Part shown: positions 935 to 45,566 of the stretch, one piece after another
Layout of the letters: each line of letters starts with the position of its first letter
Numbering within the stretch: position 1 is the stretch's first letter
IMG/VR virus record: IMGVR_UViG_3300044712_002668
Coordinates: 186,001 to 250,000 of that record
Reading direction: 5' to 3' (one strand)
Length of the DNA stretch: 64,000 nucleotides
The notes under the pieces: model-generated
Told to the model about the DNA's origin: nothing
What the model saw: the letters and a program-made list of their open reading frames with translations, nothing else
Databases searched by the model: none
Translations under genes and position numbers: made by a program

Positions 935-968
935 TAATTTGATATATAAGCGGAACGCGAGTTTAGAA

Positions 969-1037
969 TCACCATTAGTATAATGGCAGTACGGTACTCA
1001 TATGAGTACCAGTGCAGGTTCGAATCCTGTAGGTGAT
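969..1037 (+). pseudogene. degenerate tRNA-like gene (Met-CAT-like relic)
   Basis: D arm GTAT-AATGGCA-GTAC and T arm GCAGG-TTCGAAT-CCTGT are present; acceptor is one base short; anticodon arm is the palindrome GGTACTCATATGAGTACC with no 7-nt loop. Confidence 0.6.
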
Positions 1038-1076
1038 TTATACAAATTTCGTTCCGCTTATTTATTTAAGGGTTAA

Positions 1077-16774: not shown

Positions 16775-18055
16775 CTATTCGTCATCCCAGATGCTATCCG
16801 TCTTGTCCTCTGCCATCGCCCCCATCGACTCCAATTTTACCTCTATCTCAAAAAATGTTGATAACCACTTCTTAAAACTAAGAAATGTTGATGTAACATT
16901 TTCTGTTTTATGTGGTCCTAGTAAAAATTCAGTTATTTCTGGTGTTCCAAAAACTTTCCATAATCCATTATCTGATAAAAATTTCTTTGGAACAACATAA
17001 TCTGAATATGTAAAATTACAAGATAATTTATCTATATGAGTAAACCCTAAAGAAAAATCAGGATCTATTTTACTATTATCTTTAATTATGTTAGAAGCTC
17101 TAAGGGCGTAAAACATAAGCTGTAGATCAAAGTAACCAGTTCTAAGTTTACCCTGCCAAGTACCAGTTACATTATGATCGTCAGAATAAATATGATCTAG
17201 TTTATCTGACTCTGTAGGAAAAGGCCCAGGTCCATGTCTTGTGGGATAAACCCTCAACAAGCCTAATTTCTTAATAGGATCATCATAGTTAGCTTCTTCT
17301 AACAAGGAATAAACGTTATTGAATGTGGTATCAGTCCAAGTATTATATGGAGTGAAACCTACATTCTCATCAAGAAGAACTCCTTGAGCACCTTCAAATA
17401 GAATATTTTCTTGCTGATGTTCAAATACATGTCTTAGATATGCCGAATCAGTTATGTGTAATCCTGACTCAATAAACTGCTGACATCTTTCAATAAAATA
17501 ATCTATCTCTTCTTCAGTACAGCAAATGTCAAAATTGTTTTTTACAATTTCATTTTGAATTCTTACTTTATTGAGTAGAATATTTTTAGTTTGTAAATCT
17601 TTTACTCTTAAAGAGAGATCTGGATAATCTATATTATACTTTACAGTTTCACCGATACCCATACCACAAGAACCATGGCGTTGATTACCACGATCTTGTT
17701 CTCTTTTTTTATTCAGTAGAATATGTACTGGAGTTGTTACTAAAGCTTCCCTATCTACAGATAAACGAAATAGAGGATTGTAAGGTAGGTCTGTTGCTTC
17801 ATTGAGAAGCGCCCCAGGATTTACAATCATATATTTTGACAAGTGTGTAAATACACTAGGCAAAAATGAACCAGCACCAAATTGTGCAAAGGTATGGTGT
17901 TGATCTTTAGTAACTACATTATGAGCGGCTTGTGCGCCGCCATTATATCTTATAACATGTTTTATGTCATATTTTCTGCACAAATAATCTGTAACAGAGC
18001 CTTTGCCCTCATCACCGAAACCAAGCCCGGCAACAGCAATTACTTTTCTGTTCAT
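16775..18055 (-). CDS. purA: adenylosuccinate synthetase
   Basis: GLGFGDEGKG P-loop, RYNGGAQAAH, EGAQG, TRHGPGPFP. Confidence 0.9.
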   Translation of the reverse strand: MNRKVIAVAGLGFGDEGKGSVTDYLCRKYDIKHVIRYNGGAQAAHNVVTKDQHHTFAQFGAGSFLPSVFTHLSKYMIVNPGALLNEATDLPYNPLFRLSVDREALVTTPVHILLNKKREQDRGNQRHGSCGMGIGETVKYNIDYPDLSLRVKDLQTKNILLNKVRIQNEIVKNNFDICCTEEEIDYFIERCQQFIESGLHITDSAYLRHVFEHQQENILFEGAQGVLLDENVGFTPYNTWTDTTFNNVYSLLEEANYDDPIKKLGLLRVYPTRHGPGPFPTESDKLDHIYSDDHNVTGTWQGKLRTGYFDLQLMFYALRASNIIKDNSKIDPDFSLGFTHIDKLSCNFTYSDYVVPKKFLSDNGLWKVFGTPEITEFLLGPHKTENVTSTFLSFKKWLSTFFEIEVKLESMGAMAEDKTDSIWDDE

Positions 18056-18130: not shown

Positions 18131-18136
18131 AATGAG

Positions 18137-18206
18137 TCGGCTTGTCAGGATTTCCACCTGAATCGCCCTGTACAATCAGGGGCTTTGAGAATTAAGCTAC
18201 AAGCCG
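18137..18206 (-). pseudogene. tRNA-Pro-like gene with aberrant 6-nt anticodon loop
   Basis: CGGCTTG/CAAGCCG-A73 (Pro identity); anticodon arm CCCTG-ATTGTA-CAGGG. Confidence 0.6.
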
Positions 18207-19643: not shown

Positions 19644-19713
19644 CCCCGGTAGGATTCGAACCTACGATGGGAAGATTAGAAATCTTCTGCCTTATCCACT
19701 AGGCAACGGAGGC
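19638..19713 (-). tRNA. tRNA-Arg(TCT)
   Basis: GAAGA-TTTCTAA-TCTTC, encoded CCA. Confidence 0.9.
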
Positions 19714-20046
19714 GTAATGTCTCAGTCTGTGACAGTTAGAGCATAAAAGCACACATTTGTCAAGCTCTTCCTTAATCTGTTTCGCAGATTTTAATCTTAA
19801 TTTAGTCCATTCAACATCTTTATCAGTTAGATGATGAAAATCATATACAGAATAGTGATATTCATTATTACAATCAAAACATTTTCCACCCATCATTTGT
19901 ATAGCTTGTATTTTTCTATTAATCCACCTTTGTATACAATACTTGTTAAAACAATCTTTGCATTTAGATGCTGGTACACCAGGTTTTCTTTCGTAAAAAT
20001 CGGATATTTTTTTGTCAGTTTTACATGTAGGACATTTCTTGATCAT
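19699..20046 (-). CDS. HNH homing endonuclease
   Basis: CPTC/CKDC, CFDC...YDFHH...CVLLCSNCHRLRH; last five codons lie inside tRNA-Arg(TCT). Confidence 0.85.
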   Translation of the reverse strand: MIKKCPTCKTDKKISDFYERKPGVPASKCKDCFNKYCIQRWINRKIQAIQMMGGKCFDCNNEYHYSVYDFHHLTDKDVEWTKLRLKSAKQIKEELDKCVLLCSNCHRLRHYASVA

Positions 20047-20502: not shown

Positions 20503-21321
20503 TTATTCCTTGAATTCTTTTGGCAAGATATCTACAAAACGTTTTAGATCAAAGTTCTTTGGATCTGAAACCTGACCATCACCTATTTCAATGATACGGA
20601 ATTTTCCGTCAGTTCTTCTCGCTATATCAACAGAGAAAAAACCGTTTGCAAAACCAATTTTATGTACACATTCTGTAAGTATCTCTGGTATGGTATACGG
20701 ATTTGTAGCATGTTTGGGAGAGAATTTCTCCGTATTTGAATATGCTATACCTTTTACTACAAAGAATCTTTGTTCAGAGTTTGTAAGATAATCTTCACCA
20801 TGTCTTACACATACCCCACCCTCAATGCATCCTCGATATTTTTTGATTGCTAAAACAACTTCTTGAATATCATCTTTGGATTTTACCAAAGAACCCGGTG
20901 ACATTGAGTTGGATTTTACAAAATCTTTTATAAAGTAACTAGGCCACTTTAAATTGGCCAAAGCTTCTTTGAAGTTTGCGTTTTCATCTAGTATGATGGT
21001 TTCAGCAGTAAGATGTGCAATCTTCGGATACCAGAATGGTAGGTGATGACAGAATCTATATGACTCTGTAGTAGTAAAAAGCTTGGCTCCGTATTTCTTT
21101 ATTTCATATTCAAGAATTTGATACTCATCGATATTGAGCATCCAGCCACGATATAGCACAGTATCGCCAGCTTTGATCGCTGGCTTGATAGAGATCTGTT
21201 GTCCGATAGTTATAACAGAGGCTTCGTAGCCGTTAGACTGTATAGTATCGAACTCTTCTCGCCAAACACAATCTGGCAAAAAGTCTTTTACTGGATCTGC
21301 TGGATAGAGTATTCGTAACAT
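20503..21321 (-). CDS. ATP-grasp domain protein (R2K-like)
   Basis: FIKDFVKS, EQRFFVV, FFSVDIA, IIEIGDGQVSD. Confidence 0.8.
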   Translation of the reverse strand: MLRILYPADPVKDFLPDCVWREEFDTIQSNGYEASVITIGQQISIKPAIKAGDTVLYRGWMLNIDEYQILEYEIKKYGAKLFTTTESYRFCHHLPFWYPKIAHLTAETIILDENANFKEALANLKWPSYFIKDFVKSNSMSPGSLVKSKDDIQEVVLAIKKYRGCIEGGVCVRHGEDYLTNSEQRFFVVKGIAYSNTEKFSPKHATNPYTIPEILTECVHKIGFANGFFSVDIARRTDGKFRIIEIGDGQVSDPKNFDLKRFVDILPKEFKE

Positions 21322-23944: not shown

Positions 23945-24799
23945 AACATTCTCATGCCATAGTCTGTAAATTTCATTATCAATTTCTTCCATATCCAGGT
24001 TTGGCATCTCAGCATTTCCGGTTTGTATAGCTTGTCCAGATTCATTCAAGAATGGATAGGTTGCCAAGAAATAATCAATTACTCTTTGATCTGTGGTTAC
24101 AGGAAGGGCGGAAGTTGATTTTATAAACACAGCTTGTGGTTCATTATTACCAGCGGCAATTGTTTTGATATGATTTTCTAAACCTTTGGCATGGTTTGTA
24201 ATTCTTATTTTGAAGTTATCTCCAAAGCCACCATAGTATCCAGTAAAGTACATAGCTCTTGAAAAAGCAAAGATATCACCTTGTTCTGCGGCTTGCATAC
24301 ATAGTTCAGCACGTCCGGGGCCTGGAATTCCTGGCTTATTCCAATCAGGAAGCTGGCGTTCTTTAGTCAAGAACCTTTGTTGTGGGTTTTGTTTGAAACA
24401 GATTCTTATTACATCTGCTGCTCCATCAACATCATTGGAGTATACTTTAAATTTGGTAACGTATGTTTGTGTTTTGACGTTACCTGTACCTGGCAATGAA
24501 TCTTGATTTTTGAATCCAGGTAAATGTTGTTTTGATGATGCTAATTGAACGGCACCCCAGTTATGAGCTGCATTACCTTCAGTAGATTTCCACCCTCTAC
24601 CATAGGAGCTTTCCAATCTGCACACAGCTTGTACTAGTTGCGCTTGTTGTACGGTTGGTTCGGTGCCAAAAACTTGCTTCCAAGCTTCGGTTATAATTTT
24701 TCTGGCCCATACTTCATTGGCACCTGATAATGCATTTTTTATAAAGCTGTAATAACTGGATGCATATTTTTCAATTCTAGCTACAGAACGCATATTCAT
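23927..24799 (-). CDS. lysozyme-fold glucosaminidase (GH73-like)
   Basis: LESSYG, HNWGAVQ, FKVYSNDVDGAAD, GYY; start moved to MNMRS because the longer ORF overlaps tRNA-Val. Confidence 0.55.
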   Translation of the reverse strand: MNMRSVARIEKYASSYYSFIKNALSGANEVWARKIITEAWKQVFGTEPTVQQAQLVQAVCRLESSYGRGWKSTEGNAAHNWGAVQLASSKQHLPGFKNQDSLPGTGNVKTQTYVTKFKVYSNDVDGAADVIRICFKQNPQQRFLTKERQLPDWNKPGIPGPGRAELCMQAAEQGDIFAFSRAMYFTGYYGGFGDNFKIRITNHAKGLENHIKTIAAGNNEPQAVFIKSTSALPVTTDQRVIDYFLATYPFLNESGQAIQTGNAEMPNLDMEEIDNEIYRLWHENVSLSEE

Positions 24800-24820
24800 A
24801 TGAGTATATATGCAGTTAAG

Positions 24821-24892
24821 TCTCCCCTGAAGGATTCGAACCTTCGGATTTCCGCAAGTCAAACGGACGATATACCACTTATCTAAGAGGAG
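24821..24892 (-). tRNA. tRNA-Val(GAC)
   Basis: TCCGT-TTGACTT-GCGGA, T arm GAAGG-TTCGAAT-CCTTC. Confidence 0.8.
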
Positions 24893-24921
24893 ATATAGGA
24901 ATAAATAGTTATAGTATTAGT

Positions 24922-25314
24922 TTGGAGAAAAGTATGAGTAATCTTAAAAAAATAGCAATGTTGGCCGCCAGAAAAGCTGCAGTAGAAACATATAAATCTA
25001 TTATGAAAATGGCCGATCAACCATGGGAAGCTCCAATCTTAAAAGATGATCTGGGTAAAGAGATGGGTATTGATGATGCTGCTGTTTGTAAATTTTTGAC
25101 TGATAATGGGGCTCCAAATGTTGCTGAAACATACAGGGGTGCAAATATAAATCTACAAACTAACGAACCTGTACGTAAAGACGTTGCTACTTTGAGTGGT
25201 GAATGGGCCAATGTAAATAAAAAAGTAAAAATTGGAATCAAGACTCAAACAATTATAAGCAATAGTGTTTACAGACAAACAAAACCACCTGTAAGACTTG
25301 CTATTTATAGATAG
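24922..25314 (+). CDS. hypothetical protein sharing its N-terminus with 54538..54951
   Basis: NLKKIA..AA.KAA.ETY.SIMKMA. Confidence 0.65.
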   Translation: MEKSMSNLKKIAMLAARKAAVETYKSIMKMADQPWEAPILKDDLGKEMGIDDAAVCKFLTDNGAPNVAETYRGANINLQTNEPVRKDVATLSGEWANVNKKVKIGIKTQTIISNSVYRQTKPPVRLAIYR

Positions 25315-25315
25315 G

Positions 25316-25387
25316 GTGGCATACGGGTTACGCTCCCGTCAATGAGATGTTCACAGCATCCCGGCTTCGCTAGCTGCCTCATGCCAC
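25316..25387 (-). tRNA. tRNA-His(GTG)
   Basis: encoded G-1, GGATG-CTGTGAA-CATCT; T loop AGCGTAA. Confidence 0.85.
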
Positions 25388-25389
25388 AG

Positions 25390-25460
25390 TTCGGGTATCT
25401 GGACTCGAACCAGAATCAAGAGCTTCAGAGACTCTTATGTTGCCATTACATAATACCCGA
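25390..25460 (-). tRNA. tRNA-Gln(CTG)
   Basis: TCGGGTA/TACCCGA, AGAGT-CTCTGAA-GCTCT. Confidence 0.9.
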
Positions 25461-25471
25461 ATTTATTTTAA

Positions 25472-25765
25472 TTATCTATCTAAATCTTCTACTTCAATAC
25501 CTTTTTCTTTAAAAAAAGACATTATATCCATATCACACATAATCTCATCTCTATCAGCTAAAAAGCTGTAGACTTCATCATTCTCATACATACTCCAGTT
25601 GTGTACACTATAAGAATTTTGAGAATAGTTGTATCCACCATATTTATTACCAATTTCTTTGGTGAAGTTTTTTATAAAATTTATTTGATCTTGTGTGAGA
25701 TTGGTTTTCTGTATGATAAAGGAACAGCTTGAAGAATTTGAAACAAAACCAGTACGAACTTTCAT
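25472..25765 (-). CDS. phage protein of the MK.R.GFVSNSSS family
   Basis: N-terminus MKVRTGFVSNSSSCSFII; GGAG RBS. Confidence 0.7.
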   Translation of the reverse strand: MKVRTGFVSNSSSCSFIIQKTNLTQDQINFIKNFTKEIGNKYGGYNYSQNSYSVHNWSMYENDEVYSFLADRDEIMCDMDIMSFFKEKGIEVEDLDR

Positions 25766-25783
25766 AACTTATACTCCTGTGAA

Positions 25784-25860
25784 TGGTTGAGAAGGTGGGA
25801 CTCGAACCCACAAAAATAACAGCTTCAAAGACTGTTGCCTTGCCATTAGACTACTTCTCA
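25784..25860 (-). tRNA. tRNA-Gln(TTG)
   Basis: ACAGT-CTTTGAA-GCTGT, encoded CCA. Confidence 0.9.
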
Positions 25861-25861
25861 G

Positions 25862-25934
25862 TGACCCTAACCGGATTTGAACCGGTATGTTCTGGCTGAG
25901 AACCAAAAATCCTTAACCGTTAGATGATAGGGCC
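25862..25934 (-). tRNA. tRNA-Glu(CTC)
   Basis: GGCCCTA/TAGGGTC, TTTGG-TTCTCAG-CCAGA. Confidence 0.88.
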
Positions 25935-25977
25935 AAAATCGTGATGACAATTGCCAGCGCTGGTAAATATCATCACT

Positions 25978-26033
25978 AAATCTTGTTGAGGAATCGAACC
26001 CCCTTGTGCGCACTGCCAGTCCAGGCCAAGATT
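25978..26033 (-). ncRNA. 56-nt tRNA-like RNA lacking an anticodon arm
   Basis: AATCTTG/CAAGATT acceptor, T arm GGGG-TTCGATT-CCTC, middle only TGCGCA. Confidence 0.55.
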
Positions 26034-26036
26034 CTG

Positions 26037-26124
26037 TGCCTCTGGAGGGATTCGAACCCTCAAGCTCTTATATTGAGCGGCAGTTTTTGAAACTGCTGTG
26101 TATACCAAATTCCACCACATAGGC
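26037..26124 (-). tRNA. tRNA-Leu(CAA)
   Basis: GCAGT-TTCAAAA-ACTGC, long variable arm. Confidence 0.88.
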
Positions 26125-26130
26125 AAAAAC

Positions 26131-26308
26131 GGGGCTGCTCTACCGTTGAGCTACTCAACCTGTATTCAAACATTTCTTCGAACGGCACCTTCGCAAAGTG
26201 ATATCCCTTTGCACTCCAGGCTTTAGCTTACGCTTAACGTTGAGAGGAAATTGCCTTCCCAGGACTGTCATACATGTTGATACTGGATTCGAACCAGTGA
26301 CCAACCCC
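26131..26308 (-). ncRNA. circularly permuted tRNA-like gene without scaffold
   Basis: 3' half 26275-26308 precedes 5' half 26131-26160; GTTGA/TCAAC and GCCCC/GGGGT pair across the halves. Confidence 0.65.
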
Positions 26309-26312
26309 TCAG

Positions 26313-26386
26313 TACCGCAAAGTGGACTCGAACCACCATCCTTTTTCTTATGAGGAAAACGCTCAAACCAATTGAGCTATTGCGGT
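26313..26386 (-). tRNA. tRNA-Met(CAT)
   Basis: ACCGCAA/TTGCGGT, TTTTC-CTCATAA-GAAAA. Confidence 0.88.
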
Positions 26387-26391
26387 ATATA

Positions 26392-26496
26392 ATAGCGAAA
26401 ATGGTGTGACAAATGGGAACCGTCCCGTATTTAGGCCCGGAGTCGAACCGATGCCCTCCAATTTTGGCGGAGATGAAATGTCACGAACGCGCTACT
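26392..26496 (-). ncRNA. scaffold RNA copy 2 (degenerate T-arm cargo)
   Basis: UAGC-GCG...GACA-UUUCAUC...UGUC...UUUC-GCUA. Confidence 0.75.
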
Positions 26497-26498
26497 AG

Positions 26499-26581
26499 TG
26501 CCATTGACAGGATTCGAACCTGCATGAGAAAACTCGTCACGTTCTTAGCGTGATATGTATACCAAATTCCATCACAATGGC
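26499..26581 (-). tRNA. tRNA-Leu(AAG)
   Basis: TCACG-CTAAGAA-CGTGA, Leu-type D arm and variable arm. Confidence 0.85.
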
Positions 26582-26586
26582 ATGAA

Positions 26587-26760
26587 GATAACGAAAAGAT
26601 TGTCAGACGGGGTTTTTGCACTAGCCTCCCCGATGATTGTAAATTGAGACTTATTTACTACTAGCAAAACTAGCATCTCAATTTTGGTCGGGGCCGGGAA
26701 TCGCACCACGGTTTCTGTATTTTTCTGATATAGATGAACCATCCAACTATGCGCGTTATC
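26587..26760 (-). ncRNA. scaffold RNA copy 3 carrying a permuted tRNA-Pro-like cargo
   Basis: GAUAAC-GCG...GAUGG-UUCAUC; T arm + CCCCGACCA, hairpin linker, then UCGGGG. Confidence 0.75.
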
Positions 26761-26762
26761 TG

Positions 26763-26845
26763 TGCCGTCAACAGGACTCGAACCTGCATGAGAAATCTCG
26801 ATAGTTTTTAAAACTATTGTGTATACCAAATTCCACCATAACGGC
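26763..26845 (-). tRNA. tRNA-Leu(TAA)
   Basis: ATAGT-TTTAAAA-ACTAT. Confidence 0.9.
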
Positions 26846-26852
26846 TAAAATT

Positions 26853-27060
26853 AAAACAACGAAAAGGGCTCAGACGAAGTTTTTCCAGCATCCGGCCACC
26901 GCAAAAAGCATATTTTAGTTTCGGTTATGTTTCCGAACTCATCTCATCTCTGTCATTCCTGAATAGAAATCGGGGATGAGTACCGCGCGGCGTAAGGGAG
27001 TCGAACCCTCATCGTTTGATTCGTAGTTCAAGATGAATCGTCCAAAAATCGCGTTGTTTT
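26853..27060 (-). ncRNA. scaffold RNA copy 4 carrying a permuted tRNA-Arg(ACG)-like cargo
   Basis: AACAAC-GCG...GACGA-UUCAUC; CU-ACG-AA loop, T arm, ACGCCGC, linker, GCGGUG. Confidence 0.75.
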
Positions 27061-27063
27061 TAG

Positions 27064-27139
27064 ATGCGGGTCTTGGATTTGAACCAAGGGAACTAGGCTT
27101 ATGAGACCCAGGAGTTAGGCCGGACTACTCTAACCCGCA
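27064..27139 (-). tRNA. tRNA-Met(CAT), initiator-like
   Basis: TGCGGGT/ACCCGCA, TGGGT-CTCATAA-GCCTA, fMet-like D arm GAGT/ACTC. Confidence 0.82.
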
Positions 27140-27146
27140 ATAATGT

Positions 27147-27268
27147 AAGTAACGTAAAGATCGAGACCCTACATGCCCACATGGGCGATTCCCCAGGTAA
27201 AGAACCTCGAAAGGTTCGGCGGGGAATTAAGTTTCGAGCTTAGATGAAAGATCCCTAACGCGTTACTT
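27147..27268 (-). ncRNA. scaffold RNA copy 5 (structured non-tRNA cargo)
   Basis: AAGUAAC-GCG...GAUC-UUUCAUC...GGUC...UUAC-GUUACUU. Confidence 0.75.
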
Positions 27269-27305
27269 GGTATAACATATAACATTATATTATATGTTAT
27301 TTAGA

Positions 27306-27427
27306 AACAACGAAATTATATTGACAATGGGCCGGTATTTTTAGCACCGTTCTCCTTTGACCCAGACCGGAATTGAACCGGTTCTCGCCCTAATTTTTGA
27401 TGGATGTAATGTCAATAGCGCGTTGTT
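27306..27427 (-). ncRNA. scaffold RNA copy 6 (T arm plus acceptor-strand cargo)
   Basis: AACAAC-GCG...GACA-UUACAUC...ACCGG-UUCAAUU-CCGGU...UGUC...UUUC-GUUGUU. Confidence 0.75.
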
Positions 27428-27429
27428 AG

Positions 27430-27502
27430 TCTCCCAGGAAGGATTTAAACCTCCGGCCTAAACGTTCGTAGCGTTCCGCTCTATTCGCTGAGCTACTGGG
27501 AG
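27430..27502 (-). tRNA. tRNA-Arg(ACG)
   Basis: CTCCCAG/CTGGGAG, GAACG-CTACGAA-CGTTT. Confidence 0.88.
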
Positions 27503-27867
27503 AATTTATATAAATCTCTATCATTGCCTTTTTTACAAAGTACAAACCCTAACTTTGTATGTGACTTTATCGATGCAATATTATCATGTTTTATAATTGC
27601 GTATAAATGATCCAACTTTTCTGTTTTTATCAGCTCATCATACATTATATTTGAATATCCTTTACCTCTATATTCTGGTTTTATTTCAATATGAGAGCAC
27701 TTTTTACCATCGTATTCAAACACACCAACTTCACCTATTTGTTTATCATTACTGTAAACTGAATATAAATGACCTGGCAGATTATATATAGTATTGCCAA
27801 CAAGTTTTAATTGGGTTTTAATTGACGCTTGTTTGTAATAAATGTTTATATAATCATCAAGATACAT
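27493..27867 (-). CDS. GNAT-family acetyltransferase
   Basis: IEIKPEYRGKGYS acetyl-CoA motif, NIASIKSHTKLGF. Confidence 0.85.
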   Translation of the reverse strand: MYLDDYINIYYKQASIKTQLKLVGNTIYNLPGHLYSVYSNDKQIGEVGVFEYDGKKCSHIEIKPEYRGKGYSNIMYDELIKTEKLDHLYAIIKHDNIASIKSHTKLGFVLCKKGNDRDLYKFSQ

Positions 27868-27900
27868 ATTGTAAAGTTACAAAAATATGCATATAACAGG

Positions 27901-27983
27901 CTCCTGAGGAAAGACTCGAACTTCCATAATCCTTACGGATGACACGTTAACAGCGTGCTGCATTACCATTATGCTACCCAGGA
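27901..27983 (-). tRNA. tRNA-Asn(GTT) with long variable arm
   Basis: TCCTGGG/CTCAGGA-G73, GCACG-CTGTTAA-CGTGT, extra arm ATCC-GTAA-GGAT. Confidence 0.8.
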
Positions 27984-27988
27984 ATAAA

Positions 27989-28130
27989 CTTGACGAAAAG
28001 CTTGAAGACCATTTTTTTTCGCGCTTTACTATTAAGCTATATGAGCAAGAGTTTGATTTGCGCTCATATCGGGACTTGCACCCGAAACTTCGTCATTAAC
28101 AGTGATGAACGATCTTCTAATCGCGTCAAG
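27989..28130 (-). ncRNA. scaffold RNA copy 7 carrying a circularly permuted tRNA-Asn(GUU)
   Basis: cargo 28020-28105; joining CG|UCA gives an unbroken cloverleaf. Confidence 0.85.
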
Positions 28131-28132
28131 AG

Positions 28133-28205
28133 CGATCTGGACGGGAGTTGAACCCGCACAATACACTTCGACAGAGTGTTGCACTACCAATTGTGCTACC
28201 AGACC
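28133..28205 (-). tRNA. tRNA-Asp(GTC)
   Basis: ACACT-CTGTCGA-AGTGT, G73. Confidence 0.9.
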
Positions 28206-28210
28206 AAACG

Positions 28211-28285
28211 TGGGTTATCCCGGTAACGATCCGGGGAATTCTTCTACTTAAGAGGTAGTTGCTGTTCCATTCTAGCTTATAACCC
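28211..28285 (-). tRNA. tRNA-Lys(CTT)
   Basis: GGGTTAT/ATAACCC, CTAC-CTCTTAA-GTAG; T loop ATCGTTA. Confidence 0.8.
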
Positions 28286-28289
28286 ATAA

Positions 28290-28369
28290 CTTAACGAAAA
28301 TGTAAAAGACCTTTTTGTTTTTTAATTTTTCATATTAATTTTAGATGAAAGATCCTTCAGCGCGTTAAG
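28290..28369 (-). ncRNA. scaffold RNA copy 8 (minimal AU-rich cargo)
   Basis: CUUAAC-GCG...GAUC-UUUCAUC-(about 30 nt AU-rich)-GGUC...UUUC-GUUAAG. Confidence 0.75.
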
Positions 28370-28371
28370 AG

Positions 28372-28446
28372 TGGGCCCAGCCGGTAACGATCCGGCGAAT
28401 TCTTCTGCTTAAAAGGCAGCTGCTGTTCCATTCTAGCTTTAGGCCC
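28372..28446 (-). tRNA. tRNA-Lys(TTT)
   Basis: GGGCCTA/TGGGCCC, CTGC-CTTTTAA-GCAG; T loop ATCGTTA. Confidence 0.8.
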
Positions 28447-28452
28447 AATATG

Positions 28453-28568
28453 ATATGACGAAAAATTAATGACCTGTTTTTTCAGCGGGACTTGAACCCA
28501 CAAATGTTTCCGTATAGGGGAAATGCTTTAACCAATTTAGCGATGAAAGGTCATTCAGCGCGTCATAT
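28453..28568 (-). ncRNA. scaffold RNA copy 9 carrying an acceptor-less tRNA body (UAU)
   Basis: D arm, UUUCC-CCUAUAC-GGAAA and T arm lie directly between UUUCAUC and GGUC. Confidence 0.75.
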
Positions 28569-28644
28569 TGGTCCCGTCCCCTGGTTTCGCGCCAGGCTCC
28601 CTTGCTCTTCAGGCAAATGCTTTCACTAGATTAGCTTAGACGGG
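28569..28644 (-). tRNA. tRNA-Phe(GAA)
   Basis: TTTGC-CTGAAGA-GCAAG, encoded CCA; T loop CGCGAAA. Confidence 0.82.
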
Positions 28645-28652
28645 ATAATAGT

Positions 28653-28808
28653 AGATAACGAAAAATTGAAAAACCCTTTTTTACGCGCTCTGACCAACTG
28701 AGCTATCTGCCTATTTTGGGTTCAATTAAGAACCTTGTAGGCAGAATTGGATTCGAACCAATGACATCGTCCTTATAATGGATGAAAGATTTTTCTACCG
28801 CGTTATCT
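28653..28808 (-). ncRNA. scaffold RNA copy 10 carrying a circularly permuted tRNA-Ile(UAU)
   Basis: cargo 28684-28782; joining CG|UCC restores CGUCC/GGACG. Confidence 0.82.
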
Positions 28809-28809
28809 G

Positions 28810-28894
28810 TGGGGCTGATAGGATTCGAACCTACTAGGCCAATCGGCCGACAGTTTTACAGACTGTTGCAACTCTCCCGCTTTGCCGCAACCCC
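28810..28894 (-). tRNA. tRNA-Tyr(GTA)
   Basis: ACAGT-CTGTAAA-ACTGT, long variable arm. Confidence 0.9.
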
Positions 28895-28949
28895 ATAAAT
28901 AAATTCAGTTTTCAGTGATCAATGTTTTCTTTCTGCTTTTTTAGCAGAG

Positions 28950-29020
28950 CAGGCCCCTCCCGATTCGAACGGGAATTCACAGACTTGGAAACTATGCGGT
29001 TACCATTACCTCAGAGACCC
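28950..29020 (-). tRNA. tRNA-Trp(CCA)
   Basis: GGGTCTC/GGGGCCT-G73, ATAGT-TTCCAAG-TCTGT. Confidence 0.75.
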
Positions 29021-29159
29021 ATTTATCATATTGTCTTCTTTTCTTATTTGATTGTTTCTTGTATGCCCTCTTCGCTTCTCGTTCTTCTTTCTTTGTTCTA
29101 TAATTTCTTTTTAATGTTTTTTCTTTCAACCACTTTAGATCATTTTCCAACTCATCCAT
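28992..29159 (-). CDS. small basic hypothetical protein (not in the supplied track)
   Basis: 55-aa ORF MDELENDLKW...KRAYKKQSNKKRRQ; stop lies inside tRNA-Trp. Confidence 0.45.
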   Translation of the reverse strand: MDELENDLKWLKEKTLKRNYRTKKEEREAKRAYKKQSNKKRRQYDKWVSEVMVTA

Positions 29160-29474
29160 TCAAAACCCCTTTAAGCACTAAAACCAGCTTCGCTTTCGCT
29201 CTGCTGGTTTTATGATCCTAAAAAGGTTAATCATTCAACAGAGCGAACTTCGGTATCTATTAAAATTATCCCAATGACGATAATCTCCCATAGAAGCATC
29301 ACGCTTCTCTTGGAGGTTTACTTTTGATAACTGTTTAATAGACATAATGATCTCGTTCGTGTGATAATATACCCAGCTATGCGTAGACCGTCAAGAAAAA
29401 TTCGTCACTACCTCAAAAAAATCGTATCCACCGAGCAATCCTGCCAATCTACGCATCTTTTGATACTTTCATAT

Positions 29475-29756
29475 ATGGCAAAACCATCAAACAAAATTCA
29501 AAGATTTGCTTTATCTGTAAAAAATAAGCAGGATGAACTTGATATTGAAATAGCCAAGAAGCGTGAGCTGTCTCGACACCTTCTTTCAAAAGATGATGAA
29601 GATATTTCCAACATTATAGATGTTCCAAATTTAGAAGAAGATAAAGATGAAGGAAATCCAGAAGAAGATGTTTCAAATATTTTTGATGAAGGACAAGGAG
29701 AAGAAGTTCTTGTAAATAAAATGGCACAATATTTATCTTTAAAAAGGTATAAATGA
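29475..29756 (+). CDS. acidic hypothetical protein
   Basis: start placed at MAKPSNKIQRFA; overlaps the next start. Confidence 0.55.
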   Translation: MAKPSNKIQRFALSVKNKQDELDIEIAKKRELSRHLLSKDDEDISNIIDVPNLEEDKDEGNPEEDVSNIFDEGQGEEVLVNKMAQYLSLKRYK

Positions 29757-30370
29757 GTTCTATAAATGGATCAATATCTGTTCCTGGTGCATTGATACTG
29801 GTAAATAATGATTTATCAAGTACAATACAATCTCGTTTAATGACTCAATTATATATAGATGAGGCAATTACTGGAACAGAATTTGATGCTAGAATGATAG
29901 CAGATCCTAATTACGCCCATAATGTTAGAGTTCTAAGAAATAGAATAATGGTAATACGAAGCTTTCAAGATAGTTTTGACAGATCACCTTTTGATGTGGT
30001 TATATTTGTAAAGTTTGCATTAGCTTCAATAGAGAAAAATTGCTTCGGCCCACCACATCAAACTTTTCAAATAAAAAATTTGTACTGGGGTCAATTGTGT
30101 ATCCATGATATCGATACTACAAGATCTTGCCAAAATAAAGCTTGCGGTTGCTACACCGGACAATGTCCCCAAAATAGTTGCTGTACCCCTTGTAATACAA
30201 ATGGCCCTCTATATCCAGATCCTAACCCATTCCTTCCAAAAGATTATAACAAATACCATCCATTCTCATCACAACCTAATTGTGGATGTTGTAATGAAAA
30301 CCGCCCAAGAGAACTATGGTGTACCGCCGATGGTTGTGTTCCCTATATAGATATACCTCTCAAGAAATAA
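29753..30370 (+). CDS. hypothetical protein with Cys-rich C-terminus
   Basis: 205 aa; about 12 Cys in the last 95 aa. Confidence 0.6.
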   Translation: MSSINGSISVPGALILVNNDLSSTIQSRLMTQLYIDEAITGTEFDARMIADPNYAHNVRVLRNRIMVIRSFQDSFDRSPFDVVIFVKFALASIEKNCFGPPHQTFQIKNLYWGQLCIHDIDTTRSCQNKACGCYTGQCPQNSCCTPCNTNGPLYPDPNPFLPKDYNKYHPFSSQPNCGCCNENRPRELWCTADGCVPYIDIPLKK

Positions 30371-32432: not shown

Positions 32433-33791
32433 TTATAGTTTTGCAGCAGCCAATTCGGCCAACGGGGAACGTTCGCATTTTGATAAAGTAATATGTCCAA
32501 CCATTTCTTCATCTTTCATCTTCTCTATAGCTAAAGAAAAACCGTTTGTTTTCTTATCAAGATAGTGAGCATCGATTTGTTCTGGGTCACCGGTCAATAC
32601 TATTTTTGTTTTCTCACCACATCTTGTAATCAAAGTTTTAATCTCATGTAATGTAGTATTCTGCATTTCATCGGCTATGATGAATTGACATGGTAAGCTT
32701 CTTCCACGAATGTATGTCAATGGTTCAACTTTGATTTTCTCTTGTTCGAATAGTTGTCCATAATCCATTCCTGTTTTTTTCTTTCCACCCAACATCATAA
32801 TCAATTCAAGGTTGTCATAGATGGGCTGCATCCAGGGATCCATCTTCTCTCCCATATCTCCAGGTAGGAATCCTAAATCCTTTCCCATTGGCATAACCGG
32901 ACGGCTTACAATCATCTTCGTATAACCACCCTCTATAAATGTTTTATAGAACCCAGCACAAATGGCAAGTAAACTTTTACCACCACCAGCCGATCCAGAT
33001 AGGGTTACCATTTTAACATCGTCATCCAATAATAAATCCAATGCAAATTGTTGTTCCCTGTTCTTTGGTTTGATTCCCATCACCCCCTCTTTAGGAACTT
33101 TCAATGGACATATCTTTTTATATTTTCCAATGTACCTTCCTAAAGCTGTCCTTCCCATATCACTTCTCATCGCAATACAGGCATTAGGATATAAATCAAT
33201 ACCAGCAGGAGGAAGGATAGCTCCAGCTTTAAACATCTCATTTATATAAGAATCTTCAACCTCTAAATCTATAATGCCAGATATAAGCTGATCAGGGTCT
33301 ATTGATTGATTTTCATATGAAGCCGATTGTATTCCTAGACTGTCAGCACGAATGCGTAAGTTTACATCCATGGTGACTAGAATAGCTCTCAACTCTTGGC
33401 TCTCCTTTATATCAAGAGCTGATTGTAGGATGGCGTTGTCCATGCTGTTGTTCTCCATGCCAACACCAAGAAAACGTCTCTCACGGGGCACGTAGACCTT
33501 TAAAATACCATCCCCTACCGGTACTCCGTCTGATAAACTTCCTTCGCAACGCAACTCGTCAATCAAACGGCAGGCTTCCCGCGCTCCTCTCCCACGTATG
33601 CTCTGCTCTGATTTCAATTTATCAAGCTCTTCAAGCACATATATGGGGACATATAAATTGTTATCCTCAAATTTAAAAATAGATCTTGGATCGTGAATTA
33701 AAACATTCGTATCAAGAATATAACTTTTTTTTGTCAAAAGGACCTCTTTAGGGAGAATTTTATCTCCCTTCTTAATACCAGTATATGCCAA
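32433..33791 (-). CDS. phoH: PIN-PhoH (PhoH2/YlaK-like) protein
   Basis: PIN ILDTNVLIHD...VLEELD; PhoH GSAGGGKS, PLTYIRGRSL, DEMQN, LTGDPEQID. Confidence 0.9.
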   Translation of the reverse strand: MAYTGIKKGDKILPKEVLLTKKSYILDTNVLIHDPRSIFKFEDNNLYVPIYVLEELDKLKSEQSIRGRGAREACRLIDELRCEGSLSDGVPVGDGILKVYVPRERRFLGVGMENNSMDNAILQSALDIKESQELRAILVTMDVNLRIRADSLGIQSASYENQSIDPDQLISGIIDLEVEDSYINEMFKAGAILPPAGIDLYPNACIAMRSDMGRTALGRYIGKYKKICPLKVPKEGVMGIKPKNREQQFALDLLLDDDVKMVTLSGSAGGGKSLLAICAGFYKTFIEGGYTKMIVSRPVMPMGKDLGFLPGDMGEKMDPWMQPIYDNLELIMMLGGKKKTGMDYGQLFEQEKIKVEPLTYIRGRSLPCQFIIADEMQNTTLHEIKTLITRCGEKTKIVLTGDPEQIDAHYLDKKTNGFSLAIEKMKDEEMVGHITLSKCERSPLAELAAAKL

Positions 33792-39810: not shown

Positions 39811-40611
39811 ATGCTAAAGAAATCTCTCCTATTTGCCGAAATTTTCAAAGAAGCTGCCGCCCTCCCAGCTCAAATCCATCATGCCAAAATCATCCTCGGC
39901 TTGAACCCACTTCAACAATATTCTATCCAAGAACTGTCTGCCAAATTCCGCGAACTCGCTAAATCCCTACACCCTGATACCAATCCCCAGAATCAACAAG
40001 AACTTACCTCCCTCTTTCAAAAAGTATCCGAAGCCTATCACCTACTCCTTCAACACCCGGAAAACCCTAAACCAAAAATCCAACCAGAACCCGATGAACC
40101 CCTCGATCCCAATGTCCAGGCTATCCTCGATCTCCCCCTCCATAAGTTCCAAACTATATTCAATGCTATCATCAATCAAGCTAAAAAAAATAAACTAAAT
40201 AATCTCATCTCCCCCTCCGATCACCCCATCCCTATTCTCAGAAATATTCTAAATTCCTTAAATAAAAACTCCAACGCTTTTATCCATGCTACCAAAATAA
40301 GACAGGTAACCGATAATACCCCCTACCTCGCTCTCCTGTTCCATGCCGTAAACTCTATCCCGCCTTCCCTGAATCCTCAATCCATTTCCCATCCCTCCTA
40401 TATCTCACTCCCTCCTTCCTTCGTTCCATATGATTCCCCAGATGGTATCTTTATCCTCTTTCCTACACCTACAGATTTCTCTCCCTCCGATCCCCTCCCT
40501 CATAAACCTTCCTTCATCCCTAATCAATTCCTTCTCTCCTATAACCCTCCTGGCTCTATCCTACCCGTTATCGTTAATAAACAATTTGCCCAAAATATCA
40601 ACCTTATCTGA
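39811..40611 (+). CDS. J-domain (DnaJ-like) protein
   Basis: ILGL...KFRELAKSLHPD...FQKVSEAYHLL. Confidence 0.8.
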   Translation: MLKKSLLFAEIFKEAAALPAQIHHAKIILGLNPLQQYSIQELSAKFRELAKSLHPDTNPQNQQELTSLFQKVSEAYHLLLQHPENPKPKIQPEPDEPLDPNVQAILDLPLHKFQTIFNAIINQAKKNKLNNLISPSDHPIPILRNILNSLNKNSNAFIHATKIRQVTDNTPYLALLFHAVNSIPPSLNPQSISHPSYISLPPSFVPYDSPDGIFILFPTPTDFSPSDPLPHKPSFIPNQFLLSYNPPGSILPVIVNKQFAQNINLI

Positions 40612-40859
40612 CCTATCTGTATGTTATTATTCGGTTTTTGATTGGTATTACCACTAAAAACTTGAACTGAATAATAACATAGTTATTTTATAGGGGCAAA
40701 CAACGATTGTTTTAAATATCATTTTTTCGTACCCACTTTAAAACACTTTTTGGGAAATTCTCCCACAATCCAAAAATAAAACTCTTAAAAAATAAACATA
40801 TCAAAAGTAAACAAGTATATAATGGATAGTAGATATAAATACTATCCGTTTTCATTATA

Positions 40860-41050
40860 ACACATAAGGTATATAAGCAGAGGTTATAAGTAAACGGTTA
40901 GGTATATAAGGTAAGGTATAGGTAAGGTTAAGTGGTATATAAGTTTTGTGCTATGTAAGGTATATAAGTTATTTTAGGTGGTATATAAGTTTTGTGCCAT
41001 GTATATTTTAGGTGGTATAAGTTTTATGGTATATAAGTTTTGTGCCATAA
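40860..41050. repeat. iterated GGTATATAAG / TATAAGTTTTGTGCCAT repeats (candidate origin)
   Basis: six GGTATATAAG copies and three TGGTATATAAGTTTTGTGC copies at the skew inversion. Confidence 0.65.
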
Positions 41051-41264
41051 ACCCCTTTTGTGGGGCGCCCGCCGTCCTAGACACAATCCGCCCACCGCGC
41101 GTAACTCGCAATCCTCCGCCCTAACCCTGGGGGTAGCCACCGGGAATCCCCCTCGCGTTGGCTGGCCAGAAAAGCGTCCTGCATGGTGCGGCACCTTTAA
41201 TGGCTAGCTAATGATACCCGTGGTTAACATGAATAATGTTTCGAGGGGGAATACGAGGTACACC

Positions 41265-41813
41265 ATGGCCGGTTCCAACGCTTCCAAGTCTTCCAAGCCC
41301 GTCAACCCCGCTACCACCACCGAGGAGGTTACCATGAATGACGTTCCCCCCGCTCCCCCTGCTCCCCCTGCTGAGATCGACGATGAGCTGCCCGAGGGCG
41401 ATGGCCCTGCCGGGGATGGCTCCTTCAGCGCCACGGATCGTAAGTCCCTCCAGTATTGGGGGGCTCAGGTTCTGCACGCCAGGAACTATGGGCCGATCTT
41501 CCCCACCTGCAGGAGGATCGCTGAGGTGGCCTTCGCCGCCTCGGAGGAGGAGGCGGCGGACCGGGCTGGCCCCCGGTCCTACACCAACAAGAAGGGTGAG
41601 AAGGTTCAGGTCAGGTCGATCACGCCGACTGAAGTGAAGGCGGTTGAGTGGCTCCGCCGTAACGGCCCGAAGCACCTGGCCTCGGCCCGCATCCAGTACG
41701 CCGAGTGGATGGAGCAGGATGGTCAGAAGAAGCTGGACAAGGCGAAGAAGATCGCCAATGCCGCTGGGTCTGGCTCTGCTCCGGCGTTCGCTCCGTCCCC
41801 CCGTCGCCGCTAA
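41265..41813 (+). CDS. GC-rich hypothetical protein
   Basis: GAGG RBS; strong G/C third-position bias. Confidence 0.7.
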   Translation: MAGSNASKSSKPVNPATTTEEVTMNDVPPAPPAPPAEIDDELPEGDGPAGDGSFSATDRKSLQYWGAQVLHARNYGPIFPTCRRIAEVAFAASEEEAADRAGPRSYTNKKGEKVQVRSITPTEVKAVEWLRRNGPKHLASARIQYAEWMEQDGQKKLDKAKKIANAAGSGSAPAFAPSPRRR

Positions 41814-42620
41814 TCCCGGCGAATGGGGACTCCCGTTTGGGTAACCATCATTGACAGTGCCCCCACCCTGGCCTGTCTGTGTGGTTACCCTTACGGGTTG
41901 TCTGCGTTTAATCCGGGCTGATTCTTATCAGCCCGTCAACCCTGCTCGCAGCGTTCAATCGCTCGCGAGCTTTTTTTGCGCCGTAAGAAATTGCGGTGCT
42001 TTTTTTGTGCCCACTTTTTGAAAGTGGGTTTAAATTTTTGCCCCGAATCCGAGTATGTTGCCGTTGCCTCTCTCCCGAGACGCTCAACGTTATGCCAACA
42101 TACCCAATCGGGCTCCCGACCCCACGATTTATATCACAGGGAATATAACGTGGGTATATGAACAGGCGACTTCCTAACACCCAATTCCTTCGGGAAATGT
42201 GTTAGATTGTGTCGTTCTGTTTTCCCTGTCCCGAAATGAGTTTCCTATATGGAAATTTCAAAAAACCTCGGGAAATTCTCAACCTCGTGTCGCTCTGAAT
42301 GTCGGGCTGAAAAGCTGACATGGGGCGACGAATGGGTAGAGAGTTATATAAGGGTGACCGCTTTATAAAGGGAAGCGGAATATAAATGGAATATCAACGG
42401 CTTTTGGGTAGGGCTGTTGAATATAAGGGTGTTCGGACGGCGGACGAAAAGAAAAGATCCGTTTCCGGCCCAATAATTCCCAGGTACCCTACTCCGGTAC
42501 CCCTCCCTTAATACCCCCTATTTCTCTCCCTAATACACCTACATCCCCACACATGTAGGTGGATACACTTCTGTAGGAGTGTACATATAAACCTGTATGT
42601 GTGTGGAATTGGAGAATGGA

Positions 42621-43007
42621 ATGTCCCAGCACAGGAATTTGAAGCTCCCGATTCGCAGGCTTTCGAGGAACTGGGGCGGCGCATACTGCCGCTGCTCCAG
42701 CTACCTGAAGACGGTCAGTCACCGGATTGACCGGAGGGATGCGAAGGATGAGATTCGGGAGATGATGTCCGAGGAGATCGAGATGCCCAAGAACGCAAAC
42801 CGCTGGATCAAGAATTCCGCCGCTCAGGTCTGCACCGTTCGGACGGTTCGGACCATGGCGGTTGCCGCCCCGACCCCGGCTCCGGTTGCAGCTTCCGCCG
42901 TTCCGGCCCCGGCCCCCAAGCCCCGGATCCACCGGGAAGTGAACCGTAGCTTCTTCGATGGTCTGGTCCGTGAGGCCCGGACGAAGGGCTCCCACCACCT
43001 GCTGTAG
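42621..43007 (+). CDS. GC-rich hypothetical protein
   Basis: GGAG RBS; Ala/Pro linker. Confidence 0.65.
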   Translation: MSQHRNLKLPIRRLSRNWGGAYCRCSSYLKTVSHRIDRRDAKDEIREMMSEEIEMPKNANRWIKNSAAQVCTVRTVRTMAVAAPTPAPVAASAVPAPAPKPRIHREVNRSFFDGLVREARTKGSHHLL

Positions 43008-43125
43008 GGGACGGACATGTTCGAGACTGTAAGGGCTACTCCCTGCCGCCTGTCATGGCGGCTTTCATTCCACCGCAACGGACCGATCATCACCTTGATC
43101 GATTGGTCCTGAGCGGAGTCCGATT

Positions 43126-43156
43126 GCCCCAACGGTTGAGAGCCGTTGGGGCTTTT
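43126..43156 (+). terminator. rho-independent terminator
   Basis: GCCCCAACGG-N7-CCGTTGGGGC-TTTT. Confidence 0.75.
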
Positions 43157-45554: not shown

Positions 45555-45566
45555 GATGGAGACGGC

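What the first reader, a model, noticed from the sequence alone, without database searches (positions are those of the whole stretch)
28453..28568. Copy 9: tRNA body in which the scaffold replaces the acceptor stem
Seen: D arm (GCU/AGC), anticodon arm UUUCC-CC-UAU-AC-GGAAA and T arm in normal order, with no acceptor strands. Ligation at UUCA|UC would give a circle of about 68 nt that cannot be aminoacylated. Inference: an anticodon-presenting decoy for anticodon nucleases or modification enzymes. It shares the UAU anticodon with copy 10.
Basis: partly seen in the sequence, partly recalled or inferred. Interest (0 to 1): 0.66.

Follow-up and report, generated by a model that had tools for sequence, protein, structure and literature searches.

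The report
tRNA body on a phage RNA handle
A jumbo phage carries, among its tRNA genes, a repeated and previously undescribed RNA "handle"; in this copy the handle holds a complete tRNA body by its acceptor stem, which makes a probable tRNA mimic rather than a working tRNA.

Summary
Window 28453-28568 (minus strand) folds into an 8-bp closing helix, an asymmetric internal loop, an 8-bp second helix and a 4-bp UUCA/UGAA extension. Together these take the place of an acceptor stem. D, anticodon (loop CCUAUAC, anticodon UAU, C33) and T arms follow in normal order. ARAGORN and Rfam call it tRNA-Ile(UAU) only by pairing handle bases as an acceptor stem with two mismatches.

It is one of at least 46 copies of a structured RNA family that packs the tRNA arrays of four jumbo-phage records, with a few short copies in three more. 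Covariation is strong: 97.7% of cells pair and 11 of 13 pairs show double changes. No Rfam family matches the handle.

Most cargos are tRNA-like in the permuted, YrlA-like order. Copy 9 and one other element (951-1056, plus strand) have the normal order, as in Deinococcus Yrn1.

The best reading is a non-chargeable, Y-RNA-like tRNA mimic released by processing of the flanking tRNAs. Its partner and role are unknown.

No ligase family was found, the handle joins permuted cargos at varying positions, and no RNA data exist. A decoy role stays possible but untested. No orthologue of copy 9 was found.

The parts
28453..28568 (-). Whole element (copy 9): handle plus tRNA body, 116 nt
   Evidence: Regex plus pairing scan. 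Handle model R1: 40.5 bits, E 4e-9. Fold.
28561..28568 (-). P1 5' strand AUAUGACG. The last three bases, ACG, are nearly invariant in the family.
28453..28460 (-). P1 3' strand CGUCAUAU
28556..28560 (-). J1, the 5' side of the internal loop (CGCUG). C is present in 100% and G in 98% of 46 copies.
28461..28467 (-). J2, the 3' side of the internal loop (AAUUUUU). The U run is conserved in 93-100% of copies.
28548..28555 (-). P2 5' strand AAUGACCU
   Evidence: covariation
28468..28475 (-). P2 3' strand AGGUCAUU, containing the conserved GGUC
28542..28547 (-). Invariant UUCAUC motif. UUCA pairs with UGAA as the acceptor-like extension, and UC sits at tRNA positions 8 and 9.
   Evidence: 100% conserved in 46 copies
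28481..28484 (-). UGAA, the 3' strand of the acceptor-like extension
28476..28480 (-). 5-nt bulge AAAAC between the extension and P2. The only difference seen in a near-identical strain lies here (28479, minus-strand A to C).
28525..28541 (-). D arm (3-bp stem GCU/AGC; loop with A14, G18 G19, A21)
28507..28523 (-). Anticodon arm UUUCC-CCUAUAC-GGAAA. Anticodon UAU is at 28514-28516; position 33 is C.
28485..28501 (-). T arm GUGGG-UUCAAGU-CCCGC, with a canonical T loop
28653..28808 (-). Copy 10: same handle with a permuted tRNA-Ile(UAU)-like cargo (anticodon hairpin, T arm, acceptor closed by a 24-nt linker hairpin, D arm)
28290..28369 (-). Copy 8: empty handle, 80 nt
   Evidence: 76.4 bits
27989..28130 (-). 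Copy 7: handle with a permuted tRNA-Asn(GUU)-like cargo
951..1056 (+). Second handle-borne cloverleaf in normal arm order. It has P1 and the internal loop, an 8-bp acceptor-like helix, a D arm, a 7-bp arm closed by a tetraloop, and a T arm. It lacks UUCAUC.
   Evidence: R1 18.5 bits, E 0.007; ARAGORN tRNA-???; fold z -5.95

Best explanation
Copy 9 is one gene of a phage-borne family of small structured RNAs that sit between the tRNA genes of a jumbo phage's tRNA array.

Every member has the same handle:
- a 6-9 bp closing helix ending in ACG/CGU;
- an asymmetric internal loop (5' CG plus 2-4 nt, 3' 2-4 nt plus UUUU);
- a 7-12 bp second helix with a conserved GAUC/GGUC core that includes a U.G wobble;
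- an invariant UUCAUC.

The end of the handle carries a variable cargo. In copy 9 the cargo is a complete tRNA core derived from a CAU/UAU-type tRNA, and the handle itself fills the acceptor position. The RNA therefore mimics the tRNA elbow and an Ile(UAU)-like anticodon arm, but has no 3' end to be charged.

Inferred steps:
- It is co-transcribed with the tRNAs.
- It is set free when RNase P and the 3' tRNA endonuclease cut the tRNA-like neighbours that abut it within a few bases.
- The closed handle stabilises it and binds a still unknown protein.
- The tRNA-like part engages a tRNA-binding enzyme, as a decoy or as a tether, in the way bacterial Y RNAs (YrlA, Yrn1) join a protein-binding stem to a tRNA-like module.

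Shown: structure, family membership, covariation, genomic packing and tRNA-like core residues. Inferred: expression, processing, partners and role.
For: - Fold with all arms and the handle.
- Handle model R1, built from nine other copies, hits copy 9 at 40.5 bits. It finds 46 copies at E<1e-3 in four phage records.
- Covariation: 97.7% of cells paired, 11 of 13 pairs with changes on both sides, 0 of 500 shuffles as good, slid controls 54% or less.
- The U.G wobble in P2 (31 of 46 copies) shows that the RNA strand is that of the tRNAs.
- 28 of 48 handles begin 0-3 nt after a tRNA and 27 of 48 end 2-11 nt before the next one.
- Copy 9 itself is flanked by two tRNA-like genes, 28572-28644 and 28372-28446.
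- The tRNA core residues are kept although the body is only about 70% identical to its nearest paralogue, tRNA(CAU) at 26312-26386.
- The acceptor has two mismatches, there is no CCA, and position 33 is C.
- A tRNA-Ile(UAU) with a fully paired acceptor stem and a canonical anticodon loop exists elsewhere in the genome.
- About 26 cargos have the YrlA-like arm order, and Rfam YrlA gives a sub-threshold match to copy 10 (33 bits).
- PMC4201824 describes both arm orders in Y RNAs: YrlA permuted, and Yrn1 with an anticodon-like arm between D-like features and a T arm.
Against: - There are no RNA data of any kind.
- No partner protein was identified. No Ro60/TROVE gene is present in any of the four handle-rich records.
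- The published Ro-binding motif GNCGAAN0-1G was not seen in the handle.
- No orthologue of copy 9 was found, so conservation of its three arms could not be tested beyond near-identical strains.
- The covariation alignment was fitted to the model's structure, which flatters it.
- The other normal-order element has no anticodon loop.
Confidence: 0.45

Rival explanations
1. The handle is mainly a processing or insulating spacer of the polycistronic tRNA transcript. It could be an RNase III-type or RNase E-type signal with an asymmetric internal loop, like the T7 early RNase III sites (from memory). On this view the cargos, copy 9's tRNA body included, are tolerated passengers that got into its loop by recombination.
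For: - Handles fill inter-tRNA spacers exactly.
- P1 plus P2 gives 15-20 bp with an internal loop.
- J2 is A/U-rich.
- About ten copies are empty.
- Three additional phage records carry only 1-3 copies, all but one weak hit short (59-77 nt).
- HNH homing endonuclease genes in the arrays point to frequent recombination.
Against: - About 20 invariant bases, including a 100% conserved single-stranded UUCAUC, are more than host RNase III or RNase E sites usually need.
- Cargo subtypes are conserved between phages while P1 changes with compensation, for example copy 5 and its G003 counterpart.
- Many tRNA-tRNA junctions in the same arrays need no such spacer.
Confidence: 0.2
2. Copy 9 is a non-functional chimera. 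A tRNA gene lost its acceptor stem to a handle by recombination and is decaying.
For: - It is the only direct tRNA call among 43 handle elements.
- No orthologue was found.
- It has C33, a 3-bp D stem and a mismatched acceptor.
Against: - The tertiary-interaction residues and all three stems are intact at about 70% identity to the nearest paralogue.
- The handle score equals that of other copies.
- A second element of the same topology exists.
Confidence: 0.15
3. Copy 9 is a working tRNA-Ile(UAU) gene. RNase P and 3' processing cut it out of the handle, CCA is added, and it reads AUA.
For: - ARAGORN and Rfam both call it a tRNA.
- AUA makes up 36% of Ile codons, 26.5 per 1000 codons.
- Position 73 would be A.
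Against: - Pairs 1:72 and 2:71 are mismatched.
- The leader and trailer are base-paired for 16 bp.
- Position 33 is C and position 38 is C.
- There is no CCA.
- A tRNA-Ile(UAU) with a fully paired acceptor stem and a canonical anticodon loop is encoded elsewhere.
Confidence: 0.12
4. The handle directs cuts at UUCA|UC and before P2's 3' strand, and the ends are ligated. For copy 9 the result is a 68-nt circle that shows an anticodon.
For: - In copies 7 and 10 and one G001 copy, joining the base before the A run to the UC of UUCAUC gives a perfect 5-bp anticodon stem.
- The helices would hold the two ends together.
Against: - No ligase family was found in four records, one of them complete.
- No Rfam ribozyme matches even at E up to 1.
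- The junction positions differ among cargos: 28/29, 29/30 and 31/32.
- Some acceptor-like stems are closed by tetraloops, and some copies are empty.
Confidence: 0.08

Closest known systems
Bacterial Y RNAs of the YrlA type (Rfam RF02553; PMC4201824)
   Same: - A stem formed by the 5' and 3' ends carries a tRNA-like module in the order V hairpin, T arm, closed acceptor-like stem, D arm. This is the layout of about 26 handle cargos, copy 10 among them.
- Some YrlA RNAs are phage-encoded.
- M. smegmatis YrlA is cut by RNase P.
   Different: - Copy 10 scores 33 bits against a cut-off of 69.
- The handle's conserved bases differ, and no GNCGAAN0-1G motif was seen.
- No Ro60 gene lies nearby or anywhere in four records.
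- The copies number 10-13 per genome and sit inside tRNA arrays.
- Copy 9 has the opposite arm order.
Deinococcus radiodurans Yrn1 (as described in PMC4201824)
   Same: A terminal stem takes the acceptor position, and an anticodon-like arm lies between D-like features and a T arm. That is the copy 9 topology.
   Different: - Yrn1 binds Rsr, lacks a full D arm and has a 6-nt loop.
- Copy 9 has a full tRNA core and a 7-nt loop.
- No sequence relation was tested.
Circularly permuted tRNA genes (Cyanidioschyzon and other algae, some archaea; PMC3978253)
   Same: Copies 7 and 10 place the 3' half of a tRNA upstream of the 5' half, as these genes do.
   Different: - Those genes rely on a bulge-helix-bulge motif, a splicing endonuclease and a ligase, which bacteria are not known to have (from memory).
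- Here both candidate junctions lie at one helix end, with 2 nt and about 5 nt unpaired, not two 3-nt bulges 4 bp apart.
- Copy 9 is not permuted at all.
Phage T4 stable RNAs C and D in the tRNA cluster (rnaC, rnaD)
   Same: They are small stable RNAs of unknown role, encoded among phage tRNA genes. rnaC has a T-arm-like hairpin near its 3' end.
   Different: No handle motifs (ACGCG, UUCAUC, UUUUCGU) were seen by eye in the T4 sequences. They are single copies.
Phage tRNAs that counter tRNA-cleaving defences (PMC10264068, PMC11464382, PMC11555353)
   Same: tRNA-shaped phage RNAs act against anticodon nucleases. This is the setting in which a decoy would make sense.
   Different: Going by their abstracts and titles, those are chargeable tRNAs that replace or outlast host tRNAs, not non-chargeable mimics on a handle. 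Nothing here shows a link to defence.

Membership tests
Canonical tRNA (RF00005) | Score above the family cut-off, with D, anticodon and T arms | tested here: met
   47.7 bits against a cut-off of 29, model positions 1-71. ARAGORN calls tRNA-Ile(tat).
Canonical tRNA (RF00005) | A 7-bp acceptor stem with free 5' and 3' ends and a discriminator plus CCA, encoded or addable | tested here: not met
   Pairs 1:72 and 2:71 are C.A. Both strands run on into 16 further base pairs of handle. The 3' side reads ACAGG.
Canonical tRNA (RF00005) | Anticodon loop with U33 and a purine at 37 | tested here: not met
   The loop is CCUAUAC: C33, A37, C38.
Canonical tRNA (RF00005) | Aminoacylation and use in translation | not testable with these tools
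   No RNA run holds the phage.
   40.5 bits, E 4e-9, with a model built from other copies. All motifs are present.
   It lies between the tRNA-like genes 28572-28644 and 28372-28446, with gaps of 3 and 6 nt.
YrlA / Y RNA | Rfam gathering score | tested here: not met
   There is no YrlA match on copy 9. Copy 10 scores 33 bits against 69.
YrlA / Y RNA | Encoded next to a Ro60 (TROVE) gene | tested here: not met
   No TROVE match in G000-G003, while the control genomes matched.
YrlA / Y RNA | Ro-binding motif GNCGAAN0-1G near the 5' end | tested here: not met
   The handle 5' strands read AACGCG plus variable bases. The motif was not seen by eye.
YrlA / Y RNA | A terminal stem plus a tRNA-like domain | tested here: met
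Circularly permuted tRNA gene | The 3' half is encoded upstream of the 5' half | tested here: not met
   Copy 9 has the D arm before the T arm. It is the only direct tRNA call among 43 elements.
Circular RNA made by cleavage and ligation | A back-joined junction in RNA | not testable with these tools
   Only DNA contigs are available.
Known self-cleaving ribozymes (Rfam) | A match to any ribozyme model | tested here: not met
   None at E up to 1 over 24000-30000, and none at E up to 10 on copy 9.

The most novel reading that the evidence does not exclude
The handle is a new RNA-processing module, either a ribozyme or the guide for an unknown phage or host enzyme. It would excise and rejoin its cargo, turning permuted genes (copies 7 and 10) into working tRNAs and copy 9 into a small circular anticodon-bearing RNA. 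That would be the first permuted-tRNA or RNA-circle pathway in a bacterial virus.
Probability: 0.1. Interest if true: 0.9.

Novelty: new variant of a known kind. Interest (0 to 1): 0.62.

Why it matters
If these RNAs are expressed, a group of soil and freshwater jumbo phages makes ten or more handle RNAs per genome, most of them tRNA-shaped, alongside a near-complete tRNA set. That would extend the Y-RNA idea of a protein-binding stem joined to a tRNA mimic in three ways: to a Ro60-free setting, to many paralogues per genome, and to both tRNA topologies on one handle.

It would also give a concrete object for asking how phages manipulate tRNA enzymes or evade tRNA-cleaving defences.

On the practical side, tRNA finders report copy 9 as tRNA-Ile(UAU) and miss the handle. 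This inflates phage tRNA counts.

Tried and rejected
- **Known RNA families.** Rfam at permissive thresholds gave only tRNA and a weak YrlA hit.
- **Ribozyme cores.** Hammerhead, hairpin and HDV-like cores were read by eye on both strands. No three-way junction and no core sequences were found.
- **T4 rnaC/rnaD.** No shared motifs.
- **Cultured phages.** blastn against 50,697 phage records hit only tRNA-like stretches.
- **Ro60, RtcB, Rnl1, Rnl2 families.** Absent from G000-G003. The Rnl1 search had no positive control.
- **Orthologues of copy 9.**
  - The GNAT neighbour has no relatives.
  - PIN-PhoH relatives have no array next to the gene, and no handle was found in their contigs.
  - A 17-nt D-loop pattern of the flanking tRNA-likes gave only chance hits.
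  - The closest relative with counterpart copies, G003, ends at its counterpart of copy 5.
- **Bacterial genomes.** Of the loci laid and filtered, the survivors look like chance GC-rich matches, so no host was found.
- **Candidate partner proteins.**
  - The 97-aa array ORF at 25472-25765 belongs to a multi-copy family and is absent from the complete G006.
  - PIN-PhoH lies upstream of the arrays in G000, G001 and G002. It is absent from the complete G005 and G006, and G007 has it but no handle.
- **Circularised-cargo ARAGORN test.** It was too permissive to fix junctions.
- **Reads.** Only DNA contigs of near-identical strains were available. They showed one difference in copy 9, in the bulge.

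Full report
**Setting.** The window is bases 186001-250000 of a 336-kb IMG/VR virus record. About 35-40% G+C holds across the part that carries a tRNA array on the minus strand, from 6.7 to 29 kb. ARAGORN finds 34 tRNA genes and Rfam 31. The finding lies near the upstream end of this array.

**The observation.** Read on the minus strand, 28568 to 28453 is 116 nt. Its minimum-energy fold has these parts:
- an 8-bp closing helix P1 (AUAUGACG/CGUCAUAU);
- an internal loop of 5 nt against 7 nt;
- an 8-bp helix P2;
- a 4-bp continuation UUCA/UGAA across a 5-nt bulge on the 3' side;
- inside that, U-C, a D arm, an anticodon arm, a 5-nt variable loop and a T arm in the normal tRNA order.

The core carries U8, A14, G18 G19, A21, an A15-U48 pair, G53-C61 and a UUCAAGU T loop. 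ARAGORN and Rfam report tRNA-Ile(UAU) because CCUUUCA and UGAAAAA can be forced into an acceptor stem.

**The scaffold is a real RNA family.**
- A regular-expression search with a pairing filter found ten copies in the window and three just upstream of it on the plus strand. The finding is the ninth by coordinate.
- The pattern ACGCG, gap, TTCATC occurs 10, 13 and 12 times in three other large phage records, G001-G003. The reversed control pattern occurs 0-1 times.
- Nine short, cargo-free copies align well, and RNAalifold recovers P1 and P2.
- A covariance model built from them (R1) finds 46 copies at E<1e-3 in the window and the fetched arrays, copy 9 included.
- On that alignment 97.7% of cells pair, 11 of 13 pairs show changes on both sides, no shuffle out of 500 does as well, and slid partners pair in at most 54% of cells. 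The alignment was fitted to the model's structure, which flatters these counts. The model itself, however, came from sequences other than copy 9.
- A U.G wobble kept in 31 of 46 copies shows that the structure belongs to the tRNA-sense RNA.
- About twenty bases are nearly invariant: AACG|CG, GA, UUCAUC (100%), GUC and UUU|CGUU.
- Three more phage records hold one to three copies each, all but one weak hit short.
- Matches in bacterial genomes look like chance.
- No Rfam family matches the handle, and the paper searches found no description of it.

**Packing.** Handles fill the gaps between tRNA genes. 28 of 48 start 0-3 nt after a tRNA, and 27 of 48 end 2-11 nt before the next one. Copy 9 lies between two tRNA-like genes that Rfam sees and ARAGORN does not (28572-28644 and 28372-28446). 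The flanking tRNA processing would therefore release each handle RNA with both ends held in P1. That step is inference.

**Cargos.**
- About ten of 43 elements are empty, at 59-93 nt.
- About 26 carry a T arm 20-30 nt after UUCAUC, followed by an acceptor-like stem closed by a loop and often a D arm. This is the arm order of YrlA Y RNAs. Rfam's YrlA model gives copy 10 a sub-threshold 33 bits.
- Some cargos are not tRNA-like, yet they are conserved between phages while P1 changes with compensation (copy 5 and its G003 counterpart).
- Several permuted cargos keep a canonical anticodon hairpin: GUU in three phages, CAU in two and UAU in copy 10.
- The handle enters between positions 28/29, 29/30 or 31/32, depending on the copy (read).

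**How copy 9 differs.**
- It is the only one of 43 elements that ARAGORN calls directly as a tRNA. Its T loop comes after the D and anticodon arms.
- One other element, 951-1056 on the plus strand, has the same topology on a P1-plus-loop handle. It lacks UUCAUC and closes its middle arm with a tetraloop.
- This normal order, with a stem in the acceptor position, is how Yrn1 of Deinococcus is drawn.
- The nearest paralogue of the copy 9 body is tRNA(CAU) at 26312-26386, at about 70% identity.
- The phage uses AUA heavily, for 36% of Ile codons. It also has a tRNA-Ile(UAU) with a fully paired acceptor stem and a canonical anticodon loop at G000:184644-184724, so copy 9 is not needed as a decoder.

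- No RtcB, Rnl1-type or Rnl2-type ligase and no Ro60 were found in G000-G003, one of which is complete. A host ligase cannot be excluded.
- The varying junction positions argue against a fixed cut at UUCA|UC that rebuilds tRNAs family-wide.
- No RNA run holds the phage. DNA contigs from rhizosphere and freshwater samples hold near-identical strains. In one of them copy 9 differs at a single base, in the bulge.
- No diverged orthologue of copy 9 could be found.

**Verdict.** Copy 9 is best read as a non-chargeable tRNA mimic on a shared handle. It belongs to a new, covariation-supported RNA family that works like a Y RNA but fails the membership tests for YrlA. My confidence in this reading is about 0.45.

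**Limits.** The handle's partner and the RNA's role are unknown, and expression is untested.

Noticed in passing
window 28572-28644, 28372-28446, 28215-28290 (minus strand): Three tRNA-like genes alternate with handle copies 7-10, and ARAGORN misses all three. Their anticodons are GAA, UUU and CUU. Their T loops are non-canonical (CGCGAAA, AUCGUUA). The first has an encoded CCA. Rfam scores two of them just above its cut-off (37.1 and 38.7 bits) and does not list the third.
   Followed up: partly
window 951-1056 (plus strand): A second cloverleaf sits on a P1-plus-internal-loop handle. Its middle arm ends in an AUAU tetraloop, and ARAGORN calls it tRNA-??? with a 2-nt anticodon. The fold has z -5.95.
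   Followed up: partly
G000:184341-184898 (L161:842-1399), just upstream of the window, plus strand: A mini-array reads handle, handle, tRNA-Ile(UAU) with a 12-nt variable region, tRNA-Pro, handle. The comparable mini-arrays in G003 and G004 hold a tRNA(CAU) where G000 has UAU.
   Followed up: partly
window 27493-27867 (minus strand): A 124-aa GNAT acetyltransferase ORF lies inside the tRNA/handle array. No relatives were found in the viral collection.
   Followed up: partly
window 9371-9862 (+), 12432-12941 (-), 19699-20046 (-): HNH homing-endonuclease ORFs are scattered through the tRNA array. They have paralogues in the arrays of G001-G003.
   Followed up: partly
window 32433-33791 (minus strand); G001:62582-65116; G002:200725-203220: A PIN-PhoH gene lies just upstream of the array in three phages. 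In G001 and G002 the match falls in two pieces about 1.2 kb apart inside one open frame of 835-856 aa, which looks like an intein.
   Followed up: partly
window 40000-46000: G+C rises from about 0.38 to 0.49-0.56, and the GC skew changes sign near 44 kb. IMG/VR labels the record a provirus.
   Followed up: no
window 27899-27983 and 18136-18206 (minus strand): One tRNA-Asn(GUU) is 85 nt long, so it carries a long extra arm. An ARAGORN tRNA-??? has a 2-nt anticodon.
   Followed up: no
window 16775-18055 and 20503-21321 (minus strand): An adenylosuccinate synthetase gene and an ATP-grasp (R2K) gene are embedded among the tRNA genes.
   Followed up: no
Pseudomonas phages PQ464592.1 (66678-66757) and OR575930.1 (27750-27829): Unannotated stretches are 77.5% identical to the tRNA-like gene at window 28572-28644.
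   Followed up: no
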